Below, one piece after another: positions 1 through 12,000 of a stretch of 12,000 nt of DNA (position 1 is its first letter; every line of letters starts with the position of its first letter). The DNA is from Takakia lepidozioides (Eukaryota; Plantae; Bryophyta), in the NCBI GenBank assembly GCA_030704615.1, contig JAKLZA010000039.1, positions 1 through 12,000 of the forward strand, given 5' to 3'. The notes under the pieces were generated by a model that saw only the letters and a program-made list of their open reading frames with translations, searched no databases and was not told the DNA's origin. Position numbers and translations under genes: made by a program.

Positions 1-150
1 CTTAGTTTTTATTTTTTTATTTTTATTTTTCATATGGTACTGGGTTAGGGTGTTTGCTTTTCTTTATGGTGTTGGTTTTTGGATTGGCGGTTTTGGTTGT
101 GGGTCTTGGGGTTAAAAGGATAAACGGTGTAATTAGGATTCACATACCCA

Positions 151-506
151 TGTCAAGTTAAATAAGCACAGTGTGAAAACAGCTAGAATAAAACTAGTTA
201 TTTGTATTTAACACTTGGATTTAGGTCAAGTGTTAAATCAGGTGTCAAGTTTAGTTTGACACCTGGTCTGTCTTATCTTCACGAGAGCGGCAGTCGCGCA
301 GCTCATCTCTCTCGAGTTGAGCCTGCGCGACCGAGCTCCTGCATGTGTTTAGGTTTTAGTGTGCTTATGTAGGGATACAGGTTGTTGTGGGGTGGAGGCC
401 CCATAGCTTGGGGTGCCCCTGGCTCGACTTCAGTTTCAATGAGTGATAGCGATGGATTTTATATTTCTTGTGTTGGGAGTGTATGTCCTTTCAAGCTTCT
501 TTATCA
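151..506 (+). repeat. 5' LTR (TG...CA; 3' end at 506 inferred)
   Basis: 151-485 matches 11666-12000 with 2 substitutions (183C/11698T, 398G/11913T) and no indels. Similarity stops sharply upstream of TGTCAAG. The end is inferred from TTATCA at 501-506, directly followed by the LTR-complementary PBS-like 18-mer. Confidence 0.85.
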
Positions 507-524
507 CTCGAGAGAGATGAGCTG
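507..524 (+). promoter_or_regulatory. Putative self-priming primer-binding site
   Basis: CTCGAGAGAGATGAGCTG lies directly after CA(505-506) and is the exact reverse complement of 299-316 inside the LTR. No tRNA-type TGG PBS was found here. Confidence 0.6.
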
Positions 525-884
525 TTACCTGTGAGTGCAAGGTAGGAGTTGTGGGTTAGCACTTGCAAGATTACCTGTGTGTAAGTAGTGCTTAGTTTGA
601 GAAGCATATCATTGAATGTGATCACAAGATTCAGCGTGCCCTGAAACGCCTGGAGGATGACGATGCCGGAGCCGCCACTGTTATTGCAGTCGCTAAAGCT
701 ACCAAGTCACCAGAGGCTTTGGAGTACACGAGGAGAGACTTAAAAATGCAGCAGCAAATGCTAGTTGGCACCTATGCGTGATCCTTGAAGCTGGATGATT
801 GTTTTTCCCCAGTAAGCTTAGAGAGAAGCTCTACCGTGCAGCATGGAGCAGCGCTGGCAAGCGGTGAACGCTGATACCTGCACT

Positions 885-974
885 CTTGCAGTCTTGGAGT
901 CCAAGCTAGGACACAGGGAATATGACCGGTCAACAACCAAGGTGCTGCATTTGATCAACAATCCTGAAGTGGAG
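885..974 (+). pseudogene. MAD1: Captured fragment of spindle checkpoint protein MAD1 (Mad2-binding region)
   Basis: Translates LAVLESKLGHREYDRSTTKVLHLINNPEVE. This resembles plant MAD1 'LESKLGHGDY...T(K/R)VL' and animal MAD1 'GDYDQSRTKVLHMSLNP' (recalled sequences). It is too short to appear in the ORF track. Confidence 0.75.
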
Positions 975-985
975 GGAGAATTGCG

Positions 986-1254
986 ATGGCCGCAGTAGCG
1001 CCATCTGCAGCGAGGTGCGGGCGCTGTTGAGAGGCTTTCTCAGAGAAGCGTGAAGATTTACGCACTATAATGTGCGGGAGTACGTGAAACGGCGAAGTCG
1101 GGAAGCGTTTAAGGACAATTCCGAGCTGTCGGATCTTTCCAGCGTTGTCTCTGCTTTCAATCAGGGGAAGCAGCAGTTGGAATTGACCAGGCGGCAATCG
1201 GTTGTGTATTCGTTGTATCAACCTCGAATGACGAGTGTAATGGACTTGAAGATT
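986..1254 (+). pseudogene. ISD11: Captured near-full-length LYR-motif protein 4 / ISD11 (mitochondrial Fe-S cluster assembly), disrupted
   Basis: Reconstructs as MAAVAPSA-[frameshift ~1010]-EVRALLRGFLREA*RFTHYNVREYVKRRSREAFKDNSELSDLSSVVSAFNQGKQQLELTRRQSVVYSLYQPRMTSVMDLKI. The F..YN.REY..RR...F and L....RQ..V..LY patterns are typical of LYRM4/ISD11. In-frame TGA at 1051-1053. Confidence 0.88.
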
Positions 1255-1821
1255 CGCAAGGGGGACTCGGACTCAAGGACTCGATTCTGCTGGCGGGAAG
1301 AAAAGGATTTTGGTCTGCAGATTGGATAGTCCATTCCGATGTACATCCCGCCCGTCAAACTTGCATATAACGTGGAAAGTTTAGGTTTCAGGTTGTCCTG
1401 TGTGCTTGATGTGAAATGGTTGAGTGGAATAGTAAATCTCTGAGAATGTAACAGGCTCGAGACAAAGTCAAAAGCGGACTCTGCAGGTGAAGGGGAGTTT
1501 TCTTGGTTTTCTTTCATTTGGTGAGCATGCCTGGGAGCGTGGAGGTGTGAGGAGTGGCAGGGCTTTTCATCAGTTGCATCTTTCTCAGGGCTGTGTGTTT
1601 CACTAGTTGAACATCTTCGAAGCTGAATTACGGCTTAATTGGAAACCCGTACCCTGCTACTTCTGCCTATCAAGGTTATGGTGGGGGTGGATCAGGGGGG
1701 CAGGTGTTCCAGCTCCAGTTGTGTGCATATGTAACCTACCTCCCCGTAATCTCTTTTAGTCTCCTCTAGGAGAGGTTACTTACTTGGACTGACAGACCTG
1801 GATCAGTCTGGAAGAAAGTTT

Positions 1822-2039
1822 GACCTGCGAATAACGTCCGTCCTTGTGATCCTTCTTCCTGTTCAAGAACCAGTCAGGTATCTTGAACTGCGGGGATTCG
1901 CGACAATCACCATCAAGTTCTCCAGCTCCGCACCCGACAGCTCACCAGCTCTCTTGCTGGTGTCGACGTCCGCCTTCTTGCAGACCAGGTTAGCGAAACG
2001 GCGCCCCACTCCCTTGATGGAGGTCAAAGCAAACATGAT
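1822..2039 (-). pseudogene. RPS18: Captured internal fragment of 40S ribosomal protein S18 (uS13), antisense to the element
   Basis: The minus strand reads [49 protein letters not shown]-[1-nt deletion ~1891][24 protein letters not shown], a plant-type RPS18. Both termini are missing. Confidence 0.96.
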
Positions 2040-2490
2040 CGCTACCTGAATTGAGATAGTGCCTTGCCCTATCGGAGTATGCAGACCTATGCTCCAAGCT
2101 TCAACAAATGACGAAGCTGATCTGGTTACTCTCCACTTTGTGGATAGTCCAACACAGTTGCCTTTGTCAATAAGCTCCTTCACCACTTCCACATTTGACA
2201 CTAGGTCCGAAGATTGTCTGAAGAGAGAGCAAGTGCAGATGGCAGCTGCCCACCAGGTTCTGACAGAGTATCATCAGGGCTTGTCCTGCATTAGGGATGG
2301 CTCGAGTGCTTGCATCACGGGAAATAGATGCCTGACGCTGCACAGGCCACCACCATCGCCATAGCCATCCACCCGAGCTCGAGAGTCGTCGCTGGAGCAA
2401 AGCAGCTCACTAAGCGAGCAAGTCTGTGGTGCATCTGTAACCACAAATGAAACCGGGAACGGTTCTTAATGGCGGGAACGTTTTGGTGTT

Positions 2491-2510
2491 AAAAAAAAAA
2501 AAAAAAAAAA
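2491..2510 (+). repeat. Poly(A)20 tract
   Basis: 20 consecutive A residues between the host-fragment mosaic and the extra ORF. Confidence 0.95.
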
Positions 2511-2745
2511 CTTTGATATAATAAATGATTTAGAGCCTGGTTGGTCATAACTTTGTCAAATGGACTCCGTTGACTCAGTTTTTGGGGGATAGCTGCAGAA
2601 AGGGGAAATCTACCTATCTAGACCTGGTTTTGTTTTGGGACTCTGCTAAAAATCTATGGAATTTTTAGAGTGTGAGTGTGCCATGAAAGATCCACAATCC
2701 TGTTTCTAGAACCTGTGCTGGTCTATATGAGAGACAAATCTGTGG

Positions 2746-3510
2746 ATGTACTCCTGCATGGCTGGGGGAAATGAGGACGTAATTGAAGGGCAGGTCTCTT
2801 CTCTTAGCTGTGCACACAAGGGGACAGGATTCTATGTTTCCCAAGGAACTCAGACTGATTTGAGTGGAGAACAGTTGGACGAGTTGATTGCATACTGGGA
2901 GTCAGGCATTAGCAGTAGACAACAGACTGCTGTAGTTGGCATTGAGGGCCTCAATATCGCCTTGGACAGTCAGAACTCTGTTGGAGCCAGCAGTTCTGCA
3001 GCTGTAGGTGAAATACCAAAGTGGGTGAAAGCTAGGCTTGGAACACAGCCAAAGACAGCCCCGGGGACCAAGGTGTTCAGCCACAAGGCCGTGGTGTACT
3101 GGAGCAGAGGAGCAGGAGCTGCACAAGTTTGTGCAATTAGACAGTGTTGCAGTCGGACACGCTCTGCACAAGGCAACCACGAGCGGGGGTTCATTAGCGA
3201 GGACAAGTTTGTTCTGTTTGAAGGCGATGCAGTCATTCGCAATGAAGACACCCGCAACCGTCTCAAAGCTTTCGAGTTGAGAGACTATCAGACCCTACCT
3301 TTGTTTTCTTTAGTGTTCAGTGAGGAGGGGGAGATAGCAGAGTGTTGCTTTGTCTCTACCTGGCAGAAAGAGGAGGAGGGTTGGTTAGAGCGAGCTACTG
3401 TAGCTTGGGACAAGGTTAGTGGCAGGTTTCTGGACATAGATATACCTCCTACACCTTACCATCAAGCAGAGCGAGGCACTTTGAGAGAAGTCTGGAAGTT
3501 GATAGCATAG
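2746..3510 (+). CDS. Extra ORF upstream of gag, 254 aa, unknown function
   Basis: ATG-to-TAG ORF on the same strand as gag-pol with a globular-looking C-terminal half. No family recognised. 3105-3190 may be read out of frame (alternative frame EEQELHKFVQLDSVAVGHALHKATTSGG). Confidence 0.6.
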   Translation: MYSCMAGGNEDVIEGQVSSLSCAHKGTGFYVSQGTQTDLSGEQLDELIAYWESGISSRQQTAVVGIEGLNIALDSQNSVGASSSAAVGEIPKWVKARLGTQPKTAPGTKVFSHKAVVYWSRGAGAAQVCAIRQCCSRTRSAQGNHERGFISEDKFVLFEGDAVIRNEDTRNRLKAFELRDYQTLPLFSLVFSEEGEIAECCFVSTWQKEEEGWLERATVAWDKVSGRFLDIDIPPTPYHQAERGTLREVWKLIA

Positions 3511-3777
3511 ATCAGGATTAGATCTTGCTTGGGCGGGCGGGCTTCTATTCTTCCCCTCCATCTCTGTACTATTTTCATTACCTTGTACTTGTAGTTGCCA
3601 AAGCCTCTCTTGGTGGAGGCCAGTCAGTCCGGGGGTTGGGCTGGGATATTCTGCAGGATCAGCTGCTGCTGGATTTTGGTGTGGGGTGTTGATGTTTTGA
3701 TTTCTTGTGTTTGGATCCCCCCCAACACCTGCATGCTTGACTGCGCCATGTTGGTTTTGTGTGGGCGCTTGCTTTCA

Positions 3778-3909
3778 TAGGGATTAGGCCGGATTTGATC
3801 ACCGGTCAATCCTAGAGTATGCTGTCGGTGGTGAGGCTGGAGTGATGACCAGCAAGACCACCAGTGTTTCTTCTATGGTGAGGCTGGGTTGATGACCAGC
3901 CAACCATAG
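3778..3909 (+). promoter_or_regulatory. Cluster of three stem-loops in the pre-gag leader, including a duplicated 25-nt unit
   Basis: TGGTGAGGCTGGnnTGATGACCAGC occurs at 3829-3853 and 3876-3900 (23/25 identical), each folding through GCTGG/CCAGC. A further hairpin spans 3778-3814. Confidence 0.6.
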
Positions 3910-4080
3910 GAGTTCTTGCGGTGGATGCAGGTGCAGGTGCCCTGAGCCATTGGGATATGACCCTTAGACTGCAACAGGTGCCCACCCGTGTCACTATTAG
4001 ATTAGTACTAGAGCCTTATAGTGTCACGTGGAGGAGGTGCACATTGTGAGTGTCATTACGGAGTTACCCAAGGGTTTTGA

Positions 4081-5673
4081 GGGAGAGCTACAGGCAGTAA
4101 CAGTGAGAGTGGGTTCACAAGACGAGGTATTCGGTTCAGACCACCTTCACCGCCACCCTCAATTACTGTAGAGTCAGACACAGACTCGGGGCTTCATCAA
4201 CAGGTGTGCACTTTCATTCGCCATTTGTGGGACGACATGGAGGAGATGTATGGAGCTACCAAGGGGCCTCGTAGGTACTCTGGAGCTGTGGGCACAATCG
4301 AGTTGGATGACTTTATCCAGGAGTTCGACAGCTGGTGTGATTTGCAGCAGATGCGCAATCCACAGCTATTCACCCCATTCATGGCGTGGAAGGGACTGTT
4401 CCAGCATTTGGAAGGCCCGCCTATGGACGATTACCACGAGTTCAGGCGAGGACATGAAGCAGAGATTGAGGAGTGGAGGATGTATTGGTCACCTGACTAC
4501 GTCTCCATTACTCGAGGCACGACGCGACCAGTAGCTGCATCAGTACCAATAGCTCCCACTGCCAGCACTAGTAGTGGAGCAGTAGTGCTGGTACTTCTGA
4601 GGTGGTACCAGTTCAAAGGTGCTACTACTCCTCCTGCCACACTACAACACATGTGCCTAGATTCAACCCGGTGGTGGAGTTCTTCCAGGAGTTGCGGAGG
4701 AACTACCAAGGTGTACGGACGGACAGAGAAGCTGCGAAGTTTGCAAGACTTCCAGCGCAAACCCAGTGAGAGCCTGCGAGAGGCGTACACTCGTATGAGG
4801 CGCTTGATAAGTGTGACCCAAGGGGTTACTGAAGCTCAGGCAATCCAGTTTTGGTATGGAATTCTGGACAAGGAGCTCAAGAGAAGGGTGCGAGATGCAA
4901 CCCTGTTACAAGCAGCCCAACCCACATTAGCAGATGTGTTTCTGCTGGCTGAGCGGATTGAGCTCAACATGGTGGAGGAGCGAGTTGTTACAATTGGATT
5001 TGGCAAGGACATGCCTGTACGGGGCACAGCTGTCAGCCCACAAGCACAAGGGACTGCCCAACAGCGTGGTCAGGGGGGCAAGGTTGCCCAGCCCAAGTTC
5101 CATGGAGCTTACAGGGGACCTCAGGTGCAGAGGCCCGTGGCATCTTTTGCAGGCCAACAGCAACCAGGGGTGATATGTTGGACATGTGGAGGACCCCATG
5201 TCAAGAGAGATTGCCCAGAGAGTGGCAGAAGGCCGGCACAAGCACAGCCTGCACAGTTGCAGTGTGGGCATTGTGGCAAGTATGGGCATGGAGATGCCCA
5301 GTGTTATGACTTGCATCCTGAGTTGCGCCCAGGCCAGTTCCAAGGGAACAATGGTGGCCGGGGGCGAGGTGGACCAGCCCAAAGAGGACGAGGTGGTCGG
5401 GCACGAGGTGCAGGCCAAGGGCAAGCTCCACATGGCCAAGGACGCGGAGGTCAGGGTGTTGACCAAGGCATGGCCAATCGGCTTCAGCAGCTAGAGCAGA
5501 GGCTCGCTGCCATGGCTATAGCTCAGGCGGTACCGGCTCCCAGGCGGGATGGTCCACCTCCTGCTCCTGAGGGAGGAGATATGGGCGGAATGGGATTCAT
5601 GTGCGGAGCAGCACTACCACTAGAGCAGGTGGAGTCTGCCAGCCGTGACTCGAGGAGCAGCACGAGTTCCTGA
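4081..5673 (+). CDS. gag: Gag (capsid-like region, two zinc knuckles, RGG-rich nucleocapsid); start uncertain, internal compensating frameshifts
   Basis: The frame is open from 4081. It contains a retrotransposon Gag-like segment 'KLRSLQDFQRKPSESLREAYTRMRRL...QFWYGIL', the knuckles CWTCGGPHVKRDC (5176-5214) and CGHCGKYGHGDAQC (5263-5304), and a GRGRGG tract. Confidence 0.88.
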   Translation, partial: GRATGSNSESGFTRRGIRFRPPSPPPSITVESDTDSGLHQQVCTFIRHLWDDMEEMYGATKGPRRYSGAVGTIELDDFIQEFDSWCDLQQMRNPQLFTPFMAWKGLFQHLEGPPMDDYHEFRRGHEAEIEEWRMYWSPDYVSITRGTTRPVAASVPIAPTASTSSGAVVLVLLRWYQFKGATTPPATLQHMCLDSTRWWSSSRSCGGTTKVYGRTEKLRSLQDFQRKPSESLREAYTRMRRLISVTQGVTEAQAIQFWYGILDKELKRRVRDATLLQAAQPTLADVFLLAERIELNMVEERVVTIGFGKDMPVRGTAVSPQAQGTAQQRGQGGKVAQPKFHGAYRGPQVQRPVASFAGQQQPGVICWTCGGPHVKRDCPESGRRPAQAQPAQLQCGHCGKYGHGDAQCYDLHPELRPGQFQGNNGGRGRGGPAQRGRGGRARGAGQGQAPHGQGRGGQGVDQGMANRLQQLEQRLAAMAIAQAVPAPRRDGPPPAPEGGDMGGMGFMCGAALPLEQVESASRDSRSSTSS

Positions 5674-6169
5674 GCACGAGGTGCAGAGGTGGAGTTGGAT
5701 CCACAACGTGGGGAGGCAAGCCGTCAGGCAAGGGCCTCAGTCATTCACTTGGCGGAGACAGTGTCAACGCCATCCATGGCACCTAGTTCTCGCCCGACTG
5801 TTACCGAGGCGGAGGTTACTATGCCATTGGGGAGAGCTACACGTGCAGCACTGACACCTGCTACCAAGGCTAGTGCAGCCGGTGTGTTATTGGGGGCAGC
5901 CACCTCTGTGTGTCAAGCCCCACTGTTCTCGGCAACCATGATTGCGACGCCGGGGGTGAGACCAGCTGCAGTGTTCAGACTAGCAGCAACACTCTGTGAG
6001 AGTGGGGAGGTCACTTCATCTTCTGCGGAGAGTTAGTGGAAGGTGTAGTGGCAGAGGGATCCTCGGATTTGAGGGTCAAGACTGCCACGGCGCGCGCCCT
6101 GGCAAGCTGCAGCTGCCAGTTGACGGAGCTGCCAGCTAGGCCAGCCTTTGAGCGCGCCATGGTGACACC

Positions 6170-6610
6170 TGGAGTTGTCTTGTTAGACAACCAGGGAGGC
6201 ATTTTCACTTTGAGTGGACCGGCAGGCAAGAAGTACCGGCCACTGCGGGTCTTGTTGGACTCAGGAGCTCAGCCACTGATGTTGGGCAGAGCTGCTATTG
6301 CAGGTTTGGGCCTCATGGAGGCGGATATGGAGCCTTGTCCTTTCCAGATACAGACATCTCTGGGAGGATCAGAGCAGGCTCGGCATGACACGGCATCAGT
6401 TGGCTATTAGACTGCAGCGGATCATCCTGTAGATGGCTCAGTGATGCGAGCCAAGGCCATTGTGACAGACGCGGTCTCTTACGATGTCCTCGTTGGTGGG
6501 GCAGTGTTATACCCCATGGGCTTCACCCTGGATTTCTGGGAGGAGTCAGCATCCTACAGGCCTGGATGGCAGTCAGGGGATGGTCGCCGTGCACAGCTCC
6601 TGTGACATTC
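6170..6610 (+). CDS. pol: Pol: aspartic protease domain (frameshifted)
   Basis: RVLLDSGAQPLML with catalytic DSG at 6258-6266, flap-like IQTSLGG, and C-terminal YDVLVGG..LYPMGFTLDF. Confidence 0.88.
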
Positions 6611-6960
6611 ATTGGGGGTATTGCAGCTGCCCAGCGGGGCAAGATGCCAACACTAGCCGCCTTCACAGCTGCAGTTAGTTGGCCTGGAGAGTTGCTGGAA
6701 GGCAATGCCCATGCAGAGGATGTGCCACCTCCAGCAGAGCAGGATGACATGCATGGTACGGCGGAGTTGCCTGCCATGGTTGCTCACACTCCGTTGTGGG
6801 GTACGAGCAAGGATTTGCAGCAAGCTGCTGATGGACGGGTGCAACAAGCTTGGTAGAAGCTTTTGTACCGTCAGGAGAGGAGGAGAGTGCGGTGATTGCA
6901 CCAGGGCCACCTCAGTTGTCGCCATTGGACACCACACCTCTTGTGTGGCAGCGGCCGGAT

Positions 6961-7900
6961 GAAGGCATTTGCCTTCTGGACTTGTTTGGCGGGATCAGCA
7001 CCGGATTGGCTGCTGTGCTACAGGCAGGTGTCGGGTAAGGCGTTACCTGTATGTGGAGAGGGATGAGACTGCACGACGCGTCTCACTGCGCCATGTGCTC
7101 AGTTGGTACAGCAGTACCCTGACTTGTTGCCGTGTCTGCAGTTCGTGGATACCAACAAGCCTTGCCAGCAGACATTCGTTGCTGGGGGCGCAGATTTGGA
7201 GCAGGTTGGCTCCATTGATCTGTAGTGGCAGGTTGGCCCTGCCAAGGGCATTCATCAGCCGGGCATGGCAATGGATTTGCGAGACTCGAGGACGGGTCTG
7301 TTTGGGAGAGTGCGGATTTTGCGCCACTTGCAGCTTCATCAAGCTGTATCTCCAGCATACATCTTGGAGAGAATGCCACTGATGGGTGATTCTCGGGCCA
7401 GGGTGATGGCCAGTGTGCATCAAGTCCGGTCGTGGCTTGGGTCAGCAGTGTTGCTGGATGCAGCTGCAGTGGGGTCACGGGCTCATCGTCCACGACTATG
7501 GTGGACTAACTTGATGCCACCCGCACTGCTCAAGCGTGCATTTGATGGGGTGCAGCGGCCAGCACACCTCACCGTGGATGGCATTTTGGACACAGGAAGG
7601 CAGTCTCAACGTGTGAGACACGATGACCGTTCGCCTTTGGCAGTGGTCAACAGGGTGGGTCAACCACGAGCAGCATTACCTACACTGCTCAGCTCCCAGG
7701 ATCCCATGCTTTTCGGGATGGTGGACCTGGCCTCCTGTGGGATGCTCAGTTGCAGCAGTTAGTGGAGCCTAATGCCGACGAGCGAGAGCGGGCTATGGGG
7801 TTTTCCACTGGGACCACGGCGGTGCCTTCTTTCTGAGGCATCACGTCGTCAGGTGTTGGGGCAAGCAATGGATCTCAATTGCTTGACCTGGATTATCAGC
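6961..7900 (+). CDS. Pol-embedded C5 DNA cytosine methyltransferase, DNMT3-like (frameshifted)
   Basis: Motifs occur in canonical order across frames: I LLDLFGGISTG (6973-7005); II YLYVERDETA; III ALPADI; IV IDL.VAGWPCQGHSSAG (PC at 7237-7242); V RDSRTGLF; VI YILE(RM)P (~7358-7378); VIII LLDAAAVGSRAHRPRLWWTNL (~7451-7513); IX ERERAMGF; X SEASRRQVLGQAMDL. Confidence 0.92.
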
Positions 7901-8360
7901 TTGGCTATGGCTGAGCAACGTAGAGTGCGGAGTGCACTTCCCTTGACGGTCTCTCTGCCTACCGAGACGGTACAGGCAGCGAGTGGGGGCGAGCCGGTGA
8001 GGACCACGGGTGTAGACATCCATGGCACATGTGGGAGGTGCTCGAGGTTCAGAGGGAGTTGGCAGCAAGGCAGCTGTGATGGATGAGGTTGGGGATTCTT
8101 CTCGGGATGAGGAGGTTCTCAATGATGAGATGATGGGGCAGGATGAGGCCTTGTCATTGACTGAGCAGGAAGGGGGTACTGCTCAAGAGGTTGCAGCATA
8201 GCAACCACGGGACGCGTCCTCTACCTCTAAGCCCACTGGACTTAAGGTTGCAGTTACGGAGGACAATTGGGAGCCTGACATTGGACCCATTGTCACCGGA
8301 GGAGAGAGACGACGTATACGGCGGTTCCTGAGGGCTTACAGGAATTGCTTTGCCTTCAGT

Positions 8361-9040
8361 TTGAAGGACTTGGGAGCACTGAAGGGTCAAGAGATCCGTA
8401 TTGAGTTGGCCACTGACACGCCAATCTTTCGGAGACCCTATAGATACAGTGACATGGAGAGGTCTTTGATTCAGATGAGGACTCAAGATCTCTGGGAGGC
8501 AGGTTTGGTGGAGCTCTCTGGTGGAGAGTATGCTTCAGCCACAGTGATGCCAGCTAAGAAGGATGTCTATGGCAAATGAGAGACGTATGTGCGGTGATTA
8601 CCGGCCTGTAAATCGTCAGACCAAGTCCGATAGGTATGCCATGCCAACACCAGAGGAGATCTTTGATGCCATTGGGCATTCCAAGGTCTTTAGCACGTTG
8701 GATTTACGATCCGGATATCACCAGTTGCCGATCAAGGAGGCGGATAAGCAAAAACGGCATTCTGGGGGATCAATGAGCACGGGAAGGATTGCCTATACCA
8801 GTGGCGGTTCTTACCATTTGGGCTTAAAAACGCTCCCGCTGAGTTTCAAAGAGTCATGGACAGGATTCTAGCAGGGGTGGAGTTTGCTCGGTGCTACATA
8901 GATGACATCATCATCTTTAGTGCTACGGAGGAGCATGAGAGACACCTTCAGGGGGTATTTGAGCGCTTGAGGACGCACGGATTGAAGTTACATCCGGGCA
9001 AGTGCAAGTTTTTCCACAACCAGATTGAGTCTGGGTCACA
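8361..9040 (+). CDS. pol: Pol: reverse transcriptase (frameshifted)
   Basis: PIFRRPYRYS, RMCGDYRPVN, FSTLDLRSGYHQL, KTAF, LPFGLKNAPAEFQ, CYIDDIIIFS (YIDD 8895-8906) and GLKLHPGKCKF. Confidence 0.97.
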
Positions 9041-9319
9041 TGATATATCCTGGAGGATTGGGGGTACAGCAGACTAAGGTAGAGTCCATTGCACAGGTTC
9101 CACGCCCCACGGATGTGAGCCGAGTTCGAGCTTTCATGGGGTTAGCAAACTATTACAGACGGTTTGTTAAGGGATTTAGTGCCATTGCAAAGGCTCTAAC
9201 CAAGCTGACCAAGGTGGACCAGGAGTGGCAGTGGGAAGATGAGCAAGAACAAGCTTTTCAAGAGCTCAAAGGCGAGGTTGACCTCGGCGCCCATCTTGAG
9301 ACGACCTATCAGGGGGCGT

Positions 9320-9680
9320 CCTTTTCAGCTGCATACAGATTGGAGCATGCTGGGGCTTGGAGCGGTGCTCACACAGGTGGATGATGAGGGAAGAGAGTTC
9401 GTAGTGGCTTATGCTAGCCGCTCGAACAATGCTGCAGAGTCTAAGTATAGCTCATATGGAGAATGCTTAGCTGCAGTGTGGGCCGTGGCACACTTCAGGT
9501 GCTTCTATACGGCAATCTCTTCACCCTTGTCACGGATCACCAACCACTCAAGTGGTTGATGGAGTCAGACAAGCTTACGGGGAAGCTTGCACGGTGGGCA
9601 CTCATCCTTCAAGAGTATGACTTTCAGGTGGTGCATCGACCGGGTTTGGTCAATCGAAATGCAGATGGGTTGAGTCGCAA
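9320..9680 (+). CDS. pol: Pol: RNase H (Ty3/Gypsy type)
   Basis: FQLHTDWSMLGLGAVLTQ, VVAYASR, ECLAAVWAV, FTLVTDHQPLKWL, KLARWALILQEYDF and NADGLSR. Confidence 0.95.
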
Positions 9681-10049
9681 TCCATGCACGAGCCAGCAGG
9701 ATGACACTGGAGCTCGGTGGCATGGTGAGACGGACGAGGAGATGGTGCCCGGATGGCATGCATCTGCATTTCTGTGTATCTTGGCAGCGGAAGGCCAGGT
9801 TGGACCACAACAGGGATGACTGTAGATCAAGTGTCTGAGGACCCTGAGGCCAGCAATGAGAAGGGTGGCGCCAAAGATATACATGAGGATTCAGTTGTGT
9901 TGGACTACCTCCGCACTGGAGACACGGCAGCCACTATGACTGCCAAGGAGAGGGATCGGATCCTACAACGAGCCAAGAGGTTCAGGTGGGAGGGGACACA
10001 CCTGCTCCGAGTGTGGGAGGATGGTCGAGTGAGGATTGTGCCTCACCCA

Positions 10050-11130
10050 ACACAGCGGGCACGGTTAGTGCGGCATGCCCATGAGGAGTTGGGGCATTTT
10101 GGGGGTGCGACGCACTCATAGTCTACTGCAGGGGCAGTATTGGTGGCGTGGTATGCACACAGAGGTGCAACAATTTGTGGCTAGGTGCATGGTGTGTGAC
10201 AGGGTGCGTGCTTCATTCAACGCCCCTACTCCACAATTGCACCCTCTTCCGATCATGGGATTGGGCTACAGGTGGAGTCTTGACTTCGCAGGGCCGTTGC
10301 CACTGACCATGCGCCACAACAAGTACGTGTTGGTGATGGTGGAGCACTTCTCCAAGTGGATTGAATTGGTTCCATTGCCTGATAAGGCTAGTGAGGGAGC
10401 TGCGTATGCATTCTGGATTGTGTGCTTAGCCGATTCGGTGCTCCAGCTGAGGTACTCACGGACCAAGGGAGAGAGTTCTTGGGGGAGTTTCAGGCTTTGT
10501 GTGACAAGGCCTTGATAGACCACCGCACCACTTCTCGGGATCATCCTGAAGCCGATGGCTTGGCAGAGAGAGTTGTTCAGACAGTAAAGAGGGGTTTGCG
10601 CAAGTATGGCTTGCAGAAGGGACACCTAGGAGATTGGGACCTTCAGTTACCCTGGTTAGCCATGGGCTACAGGTTCAGCAAGCAAGCATCACTTGCCTCC
10701 TTCTCACCATACTTTCTTCTCTTTGGCCGAGAGCCGGATTTGCCTACATCCATTCGCAGAGAAGCTGCTACAGTTCTTAACCTTGACGATCCGGACGTGT
10801 GGGCACGTGCATGTGAGCAGCGTGCAGAGTTGTTCAAGAGAGTCATGCCATGGCTTTCGAGAACCTTGCCATTGCACAACACCGTGATACGTTGAGGTAT
10901 GCTACCATACGTGGTGGGGGCTATCGTCCTGGGGTTCGGAGATTCACAACCCTGGTACTATGTCTATCTGCAGCAGACTGCTCCTACGACCCTGGATGTG
11001 ACTGCAGGACGTGTTATTTTGAGGGTTCGAGAGGTCTTGCCCTCAGGCGTCTTGGTCTTGGAGGGTCGGGATGGCATCACTTGGAAGGACCATGTGCGTA
11101 ATTGTGCGCCATGTCACCTTCCGAATGTCG
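10050..11130 (+). CDS. pol: Pol: integrase (HHCC, DDE core and C-terminal region; frameshifted)
   Basis: Zinc-binding HEELGHFG...CMVC. Catalytic residues: D in WSLDFAGP (10282), D in LTDQGREF (10461), E in DGLAERVVQ (10566). SPYFLLFGREP follows. Confidence 0.95.
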
Positions 11131-11177
11131 ATGGCAGGATTGACCCAAACCTGGCAGTGGTATCTGCAGGTTTGAGG

Positions 11178-11312
11178 TGCATGTTGTGTGGGTCTGCTAA
11201 AGGGGCAGCCACCATGCTGGTATGTGATCGGTGCTCTAGAGGTTGGCATATGGGATGCTTGACTCCACCTCTTGAGATGGTTCCGGATGGGGATTGGTTC
11301 TGTCCACATTGC
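11178..11312 (+). CDS. PHD finger (C4HC3) at the polyprotein C-terminus; stop codon at 11319-11321
   Basis: CMLCGSAKGAATMLVCDRCSRGWHMGCLTPPLEMVPDGDWFCPHC contains all eight zinc ligands and the typical CL.PPL..VP.G.W.CP.C signature. Confidence 0.95.
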
Positions 11313-11568
11313 ATTGGATAGTGGGAGTGAATACAACCATGGAGGCTAACAAGAAACACAAGGCCCAGCTACTAGGAGACCTTGAACACACGAGATCTTG
11401 GCTCAAGTTCATAGATTGCAAGACGGCGACTAACGATGGGGCTACTCTTGTACCCGGCCTCTTGGTTGATAGAGTTTGAGCACGATAAAGACAGTGATAG
11501 AGGACTTAGTACGGCTGTGGCTATTACATCTTGTAGCTATCTGGAGGTAGAGGACCTATCCACCAGCT

Positions 11569-11665: not shown

Positions 11666-12000
11666 TGTCAAGTTAAATAAGCACAGTGTGAAAACAGTTA
11701 GAATAAAACTAGTTATTTGTATTTAACACTTGGATTTAGGTCAAGTGTTAAATCAGGTGTCAAGTTTAGTTTGACACCTGGTCTGTCTTATCTTCACGAG
11801 AGCGGCAGTCGCGCAGCTCATCTCTCTCGAGTTGAGCCTGCGCGACCGAGCTCCTGCATGTGTTTAGGTTTTAGTGTGCTTATGTAGGGATACAGGTTGT
11901 TGTGGGGTGGAGTCCCCATAGCTTGGGGTGCCCCTGGCTCGACTTCAGTTTCAATGAGTGATAGCGATGGATTTTATATTTCTTGTGTTGGGAGTGTATG
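11666..12000 (+). repeat. 3' LTR (partial, predicted to end about 21 nt beyond the window)
   Basis: Copy of 151-485 at a constant offset of 11515 nt. Confidence 0.95.

What the first reader, a model, noticed from the sequence alone, without database searches (positions are those of the whole stretch)
627..2490. A ~1.9-kb mosaic of short host-gene fragments in the 5' leader (MAD1, ISD11, RPS18 and more), in both orientations
Seen: between the PBS position and the extra ORF lie unrelated host gene pieces packed end to end. They are MAD1 (885-974, +), ISD11 starting only 11 nt later (986-1254, +) and RPS18 (1822-2039, -). No repeat spacers or introns were recognised inside the pieces. These genes cannot be a native genomic neighbourhood, so they were captured serially. 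All three are conserved housekeeping genes. Inference: the cassette may arise by RT template switching onto co-packaged mRNAs. It could act as a 'hostage' or decoy region, so that siRNA/RdDM silencing of the element also hits essential host genes. It could instead be a source of sense/antisense RNAs that affect host genes, or just neutral baggage.
Basis: partly seen in the sequence, partly recalled or inferred. Interest (0 to 1): 0.85.

Follow-up and report, generated by a model that had tools for sequence, protein, structure and literature searches.

The report
Host mRNA pieces inside a retrotransposon
A dead bryophyte jumping gene (a Ty3/Gypsy retrotransposon that also carries a DNA methyltransferase) holds broken pieces of spliced host messenger RNAs just after its first end repeat. 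This is a clear but ordinary case of retrotransposons picking up host gene fragments.

Summary
The core observation holds. In window 596-2510, between the visible 5' LTR (151-485) and the family's conserved extra ORF (2746-3510), lie pseudogenised host gene pieces:
- A whole ISD11/LYRM4 coding sequence (986-1254, +; Pfam 8e-8).
- RPS18 residues about 25-100 (1823-2040, -; Pfam 2e-13, PDB 6e-22).
- A probable MAD1 motif (888-968, +; best PDB hit, but E=0.16).

LUC7 (596-778) could not be confirmed. About 60% of the cassette remains unidentified.

New here:
- The RPS18 piece runs without a break across an intron position conserved in a liverwort and two mosses, and both of its ends fall inside exons.
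- The cassette ends in an A20 tract, the only long homopolymer run in the window.
- No target-site duplication or terminal inverted repeats flank it.

So the pieces came from processed mRNAs. The most likely route is reverse-transcriptase template switching, known as LTR-mediated retroposition (maize Bs1; Tan et al. 2016). Antisense RPS18 does not fit the simplest form of that model.

The 'hostage/decoy' function is untested, and the idea is already published (Muyle et al.). First-reader notes report the same train (s1-474322, s1-462623) and other cargo mosaics on other DNA of this genome. I could not check them. Reads were unavailable.

Verdict: a new member of a known kind, of modest interest.

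The parts
151..485 (+). Visible part of the 5' LTR. Its true 3' end is unknown because the matching 3' copy runs off the window.
   Evidence: It matches 11666-12000 at 99.4% identity, 2 mismatches in 335 nt.
486..595 (+). Element sequence between the visible LTR part and the cassette. It includes 508-524, which is complementary to LTR 299-316.
   Evidence: Read directly. It has no similarity to host genes.
596..778 (+). Stop-free 61-codon stretch that other first readers called LUC7-like. Unconfirmed.
   Evidence: No hit in Pfam (E<=1), PDB or the Atlas. The name comes only from notes s1-474322 and s1-462623 and from my own memory of plant LUC7.
888..968 (+). MAD1-like fragment of about 27 codons, containing the conserved YD.S.TKVLH..NP motif. 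Probable.
   Evidence: Best PDB hit is human MAD1 (1go4_E, residues 40-66), E=0.16. Pfam finds nothing.
986..1254 (+). ISD11/LYRM4 pseudogene covering the whole coding sequence from its ATG. It has a 1-nt frameshift near 1007-1012 and an in-frame TGA at 1051-1053. The frame stays open to 1326.
   Evidence: Pfam Complex1_LYR 8.3e-8. PDB LYRM4 2e-6. Homologue P0002 is 52% identical, and its start MAAPPSAA compares with MAAVAPSAA here. Frames read.
1255..1822 (.). Unidentified filler. Its first part may be the ISD11 3' UTR.
   Evidence: No Pfam, PDB, Rfam or Atlas match in any frame. No similarity to the rest of the element.
1823..2040 (-). RPS18 (uS13) pseudogene fragment, residues about 25-100 of 152, antisense to the element. 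It crosses an exon-exon junction without a break, both ends are mid-exon, and it has a 1-nt deletion near 1891.
   Evidence: Pfam Ribosomal_S13 2.3e-13. PDB 6e-22. 92-94% protein identity to bryophyte RPS18. DNA matches two separate exons in Calypogeia (L002), Ceratodon (L023) and Sphagnum (L024), split there by roughly 170, 220 and 680 nt (the Calypogeia intron itself is about 158 nt).
2041..2490 (+). Unidentified piece. By the A-tail that follows, it is most likely the 3' end (mainly 3' UTR) of a further host mRNA in sense orientation.
   Evidence: No Pfam or PDB match. Its position directly before A20.
2491..2510 (+). A20 tract that closes the cassette. Read as a retained mRNA poly(A) tail.
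   Evidence: It is the only A or T run of 8 or more in the 12 kb.
2511..2745 (+). AT-rich, CpG-poor element leader upstream of the extra ORF.
   Evidence: GC 0.40, CpG o/e 0.11.
2746..3510 (+). Extra ORF ('ORFx', 254 aa). It is a conserved protein of this retrotransposon family with no known domain.
   Evidence: 22 relatives at E<=1e-3. The same ORFx-gag-pol order is seen on L001. Alignment A1. No Pfam match.
11666..12000 (+). 3' LTR, cut by the end of the window.

Best explanation
Window 596-2510 is cargo made of pieces of spliced, polyadenylated host mRNAs. It holds a complete ISD11 coding sequence, RPS18 residues about 25-100 in reverse orientation, probably a MAD1 motif, perhaps LUC7, about 1.1 kb of unidentified (likely UTR) sequence, and a 20-A tail at the end.

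The pieces were copied into the untranslated region after the 5' LTR of a Ty3/Gypsy element that carries a DNMT and a PHD finger. The most likely route (inferred) is that the element's reverse transcriptase switched from the element RNA onto mRNAs packaged in the same particle and back again. This is LTR-mediated retroposition. In the minus-strand version, synthesis leaves the leader at 2511, lands on a poly(A) tail, and later returns to the element near 595.

The non-coding leader is the place where such inserts do not destroy gag or pol, so they survive there (inferred). The cargo was then inherited as part of the element. It is now decaying pseudogene sequence in a dead copy and is most likely neutral baggage.

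Shown: the identity of ISD11 and RPS18, the loss of an RPS18 intron, the mid-exon ends, the A20 tract, the lack of transposon termini, and the position between two 99.4% identical LTRs.

Inferred: template switching, the number of capture events, neutrality, and inheritance by other copies.
For: - Identity of the pieces: ISD11 and RPS18; MAD1.
- RNA origin: the RPS18 piece is contiguous in the window but maps to two exons separated by an intron in Calypogeia, Ceratodon and Sphagnum. The same exon end after 'SKR' is seen in many bryophyte genomic ORF calls.
- Both ends of the piece lie inside exons.
- The A20 tract is the only long homopolymer run.
- No target-site duplication around the cassette or around the last piece, and no inverted termini.
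- The cassette has no similarity to the rest of the element.
- It lies between LTRs that are 99.4% identical.
- It is absent from the leaders of distant relatives L001, L003, L004 and L022, as far as Pfam can see. So it is an acquisition, not a family feature.
- Precedent for the mechanism and its hallmarks (partial mRNAs, several parent genes in one chimera, later spread as pseudo-elements): Tan et al. 2016, PMC5131818; Bs1 and a review, PMC13317346.
- Decay: a TGA and a frameshift in ISD11 and a 1-nt deletion in RPS18. Pol aligns to a relative only in pieces, and those overlap in different frames.
Against: - RPS18 is antisense to the element, whereas simple minus-strand template switching gives sense copies. 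It needs a switch during plus-strand synthesis, an antisense template, a later inversion or a separate event.
- Junction microhomology, the signature of template switching, could not be examined because no parent genes of the host were available.
- About 60% of the cassette is unidentified.
- The LTR end is not visible, so 'leader' is an assumption.
- Spread to other copies rests only on unchecked first-reader notes.
- No reads could be laid, so an assembly error is not formally excluded.
Confidence: 0.68

Rival explanations
1. The cassette, or at least its last piece 2041-2510, is a separate processed or chimeric retrocopy. It would have been made by a non-LTR (LINE) reverse transcriptase and inserted into the leader of an element that already existed.
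For: The A20 tail at the 3' end. LINE-made chimeric retrocopies built from several RNAs are known (PMC2104539).
Against: No target-site duplication of 8 nt or more at either candidate boundary. One piece is in the opposite orientation, which LINE template jumps do not give. First-reader notes say other copies carry the same train, which fits inheritance with the element, although a nested insert would also be inherited.
Confidence: 0.1
2. The pieces are cDNA fragments joined by end-joining repair. Stray cDNAs of host mRNAs would have been ligated as filler into a break in the element's linear cDNA or in a genomic copy. Each piece would then have a random orientation.
For: Mixed orientation (+,+,+,-,+). 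Abrupt mid-exon ends. Only 17 nt or less between the MAD1 and ISD11 pieces.
Against: There is no direct evidence. It still needs reverse transcription of mRNAs, so it overlaps the main explanation. The A20 directly abutting element sequence is what a jump onto a poly(A) tail gives.
Confidence: 0.1
3. The cargo is kept because it is useful to the element. Sense and antisense host sequence in the element transcript would tie silencing of the element to essential genes ('hostage'), or would make regulatory RNAs against them.
For: LTR-driven transcription would carry 218 nt of antisense RPS18. First-reader notes report other cargo mosaics in the same family and genome. The general hypothesis is published (10.1101/777037). 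The ISD11 and RPS18 pieces have a higher CpG o/e than the element (1.17 and 0.89 against 0.35-0.55), based on small samples.
Against: The pieces are decaying. Distant relatives lack recognisable cargo. The cassette adds 30 upstream ATGs before ORFx and gag, which is a cost. This copy is dead. No expression, siRNA or methylation data were available.
Confidence: 0.08
4. DNA-level capture by a nested Pack-MULE, Helitron or similar element, or an assembly chimera.
For: None beyond the odd content. Reads could not be checked.
Against: A conserved intron is missing. There are no terminal inverted repeats, no target-site duplication and no Helitron-like ends. The region is flanked on both sides by element sequence within one LTR pair.
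Confidence: 0.03

Closest known systems
Bs1 of maize (LTR retrotransposon with three transduced host gene fragments; Jin & Bennetzen 1994; Elrouby & Bureau 2001, 2010; cited in PMC13317346 and PMC5131818)
   Same: Several pieces of unlinked host genes sit inside one LTR element, are acquired through RNA, and are carried along when the element spreads.
   Different: In Bs1 the pieces form a hybrid, expressed ORF in a small element without pol. Here they are untranslatable pseudogene pieces in the untranslated region of a full-length (now broken) gag-pol element. One piece is antisense and a poly(A) tail is retained.
LTR-mediated retroposition (Tan et al. 2016, PMC5131818; yeast Ty1 work of Derr 1991 and Maxwell & Curcio 2007 as cited there)
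   Same: Partial copies of spliced mRNAs, cut at arbitrary points and flanked by LTR-element sequence. Chimeras of two or more parent genes occur. Further spread as pseudo-elements.
   Different: In the Drosophila cases the retrocopy replaces part of the internal ORFs, and junction microsimilarity was shown. Here gag and pol are kept, the cargo lies in the leader, there are at least three or four parent genes, and microsimilarity could not be tested.
KnitGypsy-Dnmt3 of Klebsormidium nitens (de Mendoza et al. 2018, PMC5890265)
   Same: The carrier is a Gypsy LTR element whose pol region aligns to a relative's polyprotein that bears a DNA_methylase domain.
   Different: In the passages I read, that paper describes the captured DNMT domain and does not mention leader cargo of host mRNA pieces. 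The present host is a bryophyte according to scan notes.
Pack-MULEs, Pack-CACTA and Helitron gene capture
   Same: Mosaics of fragments from unlinked host genes inside a transposon.
   Different: Those capture genomic DNA, so introns can be retained, and they have their own termini. Here an intron is missing, an A-tail is present and no such termini exist.
Epigenetic conflict from gene capture (Muyle et al., bioRxiv 10.1101/777037)
   Different: It was tested statistically in maize. Nothing of the kind was testable here.

Membership tests
LTR-mediated retrocopy / gene fragment transduced by an LTR retrotransposon | Sequence homologous to host protein-coding genes | tested here: met
   ISD11 8.3e-8 and RPS18 2.3e-13 in Pfam. 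PDB 2e-6 and 6e-22. MAD1 is weak.
LTR-mediated retrocopy / gene fragment transduced by an LTR retrotransposon | Lies inside one element, between its two LTRs, with element sequence on both sides | tested here: met
   LTRs at 151-485 and 11666-12000, 99.4% identical. ORFx, gag and pol lie downstream.
LTR-mediated retrocopy / gene fragment transduced by an LTR retrotransposon | Introns of the parent gene are absent (RNA intermediate) | tested here: met
   Met for RPS18. The piece is contiguous across the intron found in Calypogeia, Ceratodon and Sphagnum genes. The host's own gene was not available. ISD11 and MAD1 could not be tested.
LTR-mediated retrocopy / gene fragment transduced by an LTR retrotransposon | Partial copies cut at arbitrary points of the mRNA | tested here: met
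   The RPS18 piece ends at 1823 and 2040, both inside exons in all three comparisons. MAD1 is about 27 codons of a protein that, from memory, has about 700 residues.
LTR-mediated retrocopy / gene fragment transduced by an LTR retrotransposon | Microsimilarity between successive templates at the junctions | not testable with these tools
   This needs the host parent genes and a cargo-free element copy. Neither could be fetched.
LTR-mediated retrocopy / gene fragment transduced by an LTR retrotransposon | Same orientation as the element, as expected from minus-strand template switching | tested here: inconclusive
   ISD11, MAD1 and the A-tailed piece are sense. RPS18 is antisense.
LTR-mediated retrocopy / gene fragment transduced by an LTR retrotransposon | Carried along in later rounds of transposition (several copies with the same cargo) | not tested
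   Only first-reader notes s1-474322 and s1-462623 say so. A look-up by sequence came back blank.
LINE-type processed pseudogene | Poly(A) tail at the 3' end | tested here: met
   A20 at 2491-2510.
LINE-type processed pseudogene | Target-site duplication flanking the insert | tested here: not met
   No shared word of 8 nt or more between the sequence after A20 and 440-1000. The only 9-mer match within 440-2490 (2162 against 2551) is not at a boundary.
Pack-MULE / Helitron / other DNA-transposon capture | Own termini (terminal inverted repeats or Helitron ends) and a target-site duplication around the cargo | tested here: not met
   No inverted repeat brackets 596-2510. No duplication.
Pack-MULE / Helitron / other DNA-transposon capture | Captured genomic DNA, with introns retained | tested here: not met
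   The RPS18 intron is absent.
Gypsy-DNMT3 retrotransposons (KnitGypsy-Dnmt3 kind), as the carrier element | Ty3/Gypsy gag-pol with a C5-DNA methyltransferase domain in pol | tested here: inconclusive
   RVT_1 and PHD are found in the window's ORFs. Window 6961-7939 aligns to residues 781-1110 of the pol of relative L001, and that product has a PF00145 hit on record. The window's own broken ORFs gave no DNA_methylase hit at E<=0.01.

The most novel reading that the evidence does not exclude
The untranslated region after the 5' LTR of this DNMT- and PHD-carrying Gypsy family may be a recurrent, selected 'cargo slot'. In this reading different subfamilies load it with different spliced host mRNA pieces, partly antisense. 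The resulting transcripts would couple silencing or methylation of the element to housekeeping genes, or would regulate those genes. That would be an epigenetic hostage system joined to a self-encoded methyltransferase.
Probability: 0.07. Interest if true: 0.8.

Novelty: new member of a known kind. Interest (0 to 1): 0.35.

Why it matters
It is a clean example in an early land-plant lineage that LTR retrotransposons pick up pieces of processed host mRNAs. It has unusually clear marks: an intron precisely missing, mid-exon ends and a retained poly(A) tail. It is also unusually dense, with at least three or four parent genes in under 2 kb.

If the first-reader notes hold, and this family repeatedly carries different mosaics at the same position, the genome would be a good natural system for three questions. 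How often does reverse transcriptase switch onto cellular mRNAs? At which step of reverse transcription, judged from sense against antisense cargo? Does captured housekeeping sequence change how the host silences an element that brings its own DNA methyltransferase?

On the evidence from this one copy, it is decayed baggage in a dead element.

Tried and rejected
- **Reads.** There is no test of spanning reads, expression or copy variants. The message said to go on with other tools, and I did so on the same region.
- **LUC7.** Pfam, PDB and the Atlas gave nothing for 596-778.
- **Unidentified stretches.** Twenty stop-free pieces in all frames gave no further Pfam family. PDB was blank for 2050-2361 (+) and 1221-1634 (-). 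The Atlas was blank and Rfam was blank for 1-4300. The 135-138-codon open frames on the minus strand are not unusual: 70 of 300 shuffles reach 135. I therefore make no coding claim for them.
- **Same cassette elsewhere.** The exact ORFx protein is not on record. ORFx relatives are at most 45% identical, so close sister copies are not in the protein collections.
- **Metagenome scans.** The scan with the conserved leader motif gave 13 contigs that carry no family protein and fit the number expected by chance by my own rough estimate.
- **Cargo in distant relatives.** The leaders of L001, L003, L004 and L022 show no recognisable host domains.
- **ISD11 intron test.** The only homologue (P0002) sits on short Logan contigs with no DNA similarity to the window. 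Its gene structure could not be used.
- **Duplicated leader segments or internal repeats bracketing the cassette.** None found.
- **Scan notes by sequence.** Blank.
Full report
**Setting.** The window holds one Ty3/Gypsy LTR retrotransposon.
- A direct repeat, 151-485 and 11666-12000, is 99.4% identical (2 mismatches in 335 nt). It runs to the last base of the window, so the 3' end of the LTR cannot be seen.
- Downstream of the region in question lie a 254-codon ORF (2746-3510), a gag ORF with two zinc knuckles (4204-5673), and a pol broken into many short frames. The pol has RVT_1 and a C-terminal PHD finger.
- Window 6961-7939 aligns to the part of a relative's polyprotein (L001) whose product carries PF00145 DNA_methylase.
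- This is therefore the DNMT-carrying Gypsy kind first described in Klebsormidium (de Mendoza et al. 2018, PMC5890265). Earlier follow-ups of this scan report the kind as abundant in this bryophyte genome.
- The 254-codon ORF is a conserved family protein of unknown function. It has 22 relatives at E<=1e-3, with the same ORFx-gag-pol order on L001.

**The observation.** I translated 480-2620 in six frames and scanned twenty stop-free pieces against Pfam.
- ISD11 is clear. Window 1054-1326 (+) matches Complex1_LYR at E 8.3e-8 and human LYRM4 in the PDB at 2e-6.
- RPS18 is clear. Window 1866-2270 (-) matches Ribosomal_S13 at 2.3e-13, and the continuation in a second frame (1783-1941, -) at 0.005. 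Plant uS13 chains in the PDB match at 6e-22. Protein identity to Ceratodon, Sphagnum and Calypogeia RPS18 is 92-94%.
- MAD1 is weaker. For the stretch at 888-968 the best of 177,635 PDB sequences is human MAD1 (1go4_E), aligned over the conserved YD.S.TKVLH..NP motif, but with E=0.16. Pfam sees nothing.
- LUC7 is unconfirmed. Other first readers named 596-778 LUC7. It fits what I remember of plant LUC7, but Pfam, PDB and the Atlas gave no support.
- The rest (779-887, 1255-1822, 2041-2490) matched nothing in Pfam, PDB, Rfam or the Atlas.
- Identified pieces cover 31% of 596-2510, or 40% with the LUC7-like stretch. The long open frames on the minus strand are within what shuffled sequence gives.

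**Anatomy of the pieces.**
- ISD11 is a whole coding sequence. It starts at the ATG at 986 (MAAVAPSAA here, MAAPPSAA in the homologue P0002) and runs to the conserved C-terminal DLKI at 1254.
- It has a 1-nt frameshift near 1007-1012 and an in-frame TGA at 1051-1053. At most 17 nt separate it from the MAD1 piece.
- RPS18 covers residues about 25-100 of 152 and has a 1-nt deletion near 1891.

**The intron test.** Short ORFs called on genomic contigs of many bryophytes all lose RPS18 similarity right after '...DVDMSKR'. This pointed to a conserved intron at that place. I fetched three annotated genes to check:
- In Calypogeia fissa (L002) the exon ends at ...AAG AG. A 158-nt GT...AG intron follows, and the next exon begins A GCT GGA.
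- The window's piece is contiguous there (AAG AGA GCT GGT).
- At DNA level it aligns to the two exons separately in Calypogeia (83-84% identity), Ceratodon purpureus (80-88%) and Sphagnum jensenii (78-89%). In those genes the two aligned stretches lie roughly 170, 220 and 680 nt apart.
- In all three comparisons similarity stops at window 1823 and 2039/2040, well inside the exons.

The fragment therefore came from a spliced transcript and was cut at arbitrary points. The caveat is that the host's own gene was not available. The conclusion rests on the intron being conserved in a liverwort and two mosses.

**The end of the cassette.** Positions 2491-2510 are twenty A's, the only A or T run of 8 or more in 12 kb. 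They directly abut AT-rich, CpG-poor leader sequence (2511-2745) that leads to ORFx. I read this as a retained mRNA poly(A) tail, which sets the unidentified piece 2041-2490 in sense orientation.
- No target-site duplication links the sequence after the A-run with any position in 440-2490.
- No inverted repeats bracket the cassette.
- The cassette shares nothing with the rest of the element.
- These results argue against a nested DNA transposon and weaken a nested LINE-type retrocopy.

**Mechanism.** The marks fit LTR-mediated retroposition. In that process reverse transcriptase, inside the particle, switches from the element RNA to a co-packaged cellular mRNA and back. The marks are partial intron-less copies, arbitrary cut points, several unlinked parent genes side by side, and element sequence on both sides within one LTR pair.
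- The process is documented for Ty1 in yeast, Bs1 in maize, rice elements and several animals. Chimeras of two or more parent genes and later spread as pseudo-elements are both described (Tan et al. 2016, PMC5131818; review PMC13317346).
- In the minus-strand version, synthesis moving towards the 5' end of the element RNA would leave the leader at 2511 and land on a poly(A) tail. It would then pass through further templates and return to the element near 595. This is inference.
- Antisense RPS18 does not fit that simple version. It would need a switch onto an mRNA during plus-strand synthesis (which writes the antisense into the plus strand), an antisense template, an inversion, or a separate event. 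Joining of stray cDNA pieces by end-joining repair is a live alternative.
- Microhomology at the junctions, the decisive mark, needs the host parent genes, which I could not reach.
- That the cargo sits in a non-coding stretch is most simply survivorship: inserts elsewhere would break gag or pol.

**Function.** Nothing here supports a function.
- The coding pieces are broken.
- The copy's pol aligns to a relative only in pieces, and those overlap in different frames, although its LTRs are nearly identical. This suggests it was already defective when it inserted.
- The cassette puts 30 ATGs ahead of ORFx and gag.
- The leaders of distant relatives (L001, L003, L004, L022) show no recognisable host domains, so cargo is not a family-wide trait.
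- One small observation stands: the ISD11 and RPS18 pieces have a higher CpG o/e (1.17 and 0.89) than the element's own sequence (0.35-0.55). This could mean they have spent less time in a methylated state. The pieces are short and I draw no conclusion.

**Other copies.** First-reader notes on other DNA of the same genome describe the same LUC7-MAD1-ISD11-RPS18 train (s1-474322, s1-462623). They also describe different mosaics in the same family, such as THI1, ClpP5 and RPS7 or RPL6, said to be all antisense (s1-461888, s1-493540). None has a follow-up and I could not see the sequences. A look-up by sequence was blank. If true, this cargo predates the last rounds of transposition and the family has taken up cargo more than once. 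I treat this as a lead only.

**Verdict.** RNA-mediated capture is well supported. Template switching is the best but unproven route. A function is unsupported. This is a new member of a known kind, in a lineage and element family where it had not been described in the papers I read.

Noticed in passing
window 3833-3853 and 3880-3900; L001:1585-1605; L004:9459-9479: A 21-nt hairpin-forming motif (GAGGCTGG-N-TTR-ATGACCAGC) occurs twice between ORFx and gag. It is kept almost unchanged in relatives whose ORFx is only 33-45% identical. In L004 it lies upstream of ORFx instead of downstream. It may be a conserved cis signal for priming, dimerisation or packaging. It does not look like a tRNA 3' end.
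   Followed up: partly
window 2746-3510: The extra ORF (254 aa) is a conserved protein of this retrotransposon family. It has 22 relatives at E<=1e-3, invariant W/R/E/Y positions, no Pfam domain and no known function.
   Followed up: partly
window 5689-11320 compared with the LTRs at 151-485 and 11666-12000: Pol is split into about 15 short frames although the LTRs differ at only 2 of 335 positions. The copy was probably already defective when it inserted and was mobilised in trans. Alternatively the assembly carries indel errors.
   Followed up: no
window 986-1330 and 1822-2039 compared with the rest: CpG observed/expected is 1.17 (ISD11) and 0.89 (RPS18), against 0.35-0.55 in ORFx, gag and pol and 0.11-0.25 in the leader segments. 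This hints that the cargo has spent less time under methylation-driven CpG decay. The samples are small.
   Followed up: no
window 299-316 and 508-524; 206-238: A 17-nt stretch after the visible LTR part is the reverse complement of a stretch inside the LTR. The LTR also holds a 33-nt near-palindrome. Another finding on this window (s1-462290) reads the first as self-priming geometry.
   Followed up: no
L004:1-14471: This metagenome contig carries two copies of a related element in tandem, with a period of about 9.05 kb and 86-88% identity. Only about 2.3 kb lies between the integrase of the first and the ORFx of the second.
   Followed up: no
L002:3244-3402; L023:1822-2039; L024:5106-5787: The RPS18 intron after codon 'SKR' is conserved in position from a liverwort to mosses. 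Between the two aligned exon stretches lie about 170 nt (Calypogeia; the intron itself is about 158 nt), about 220 nt (Ceratodon) and about 680 nt (Sphagnum). ORF calls on angiosperm-like contigs (P0105-P0107) end at the same place.
   Followed up: partly
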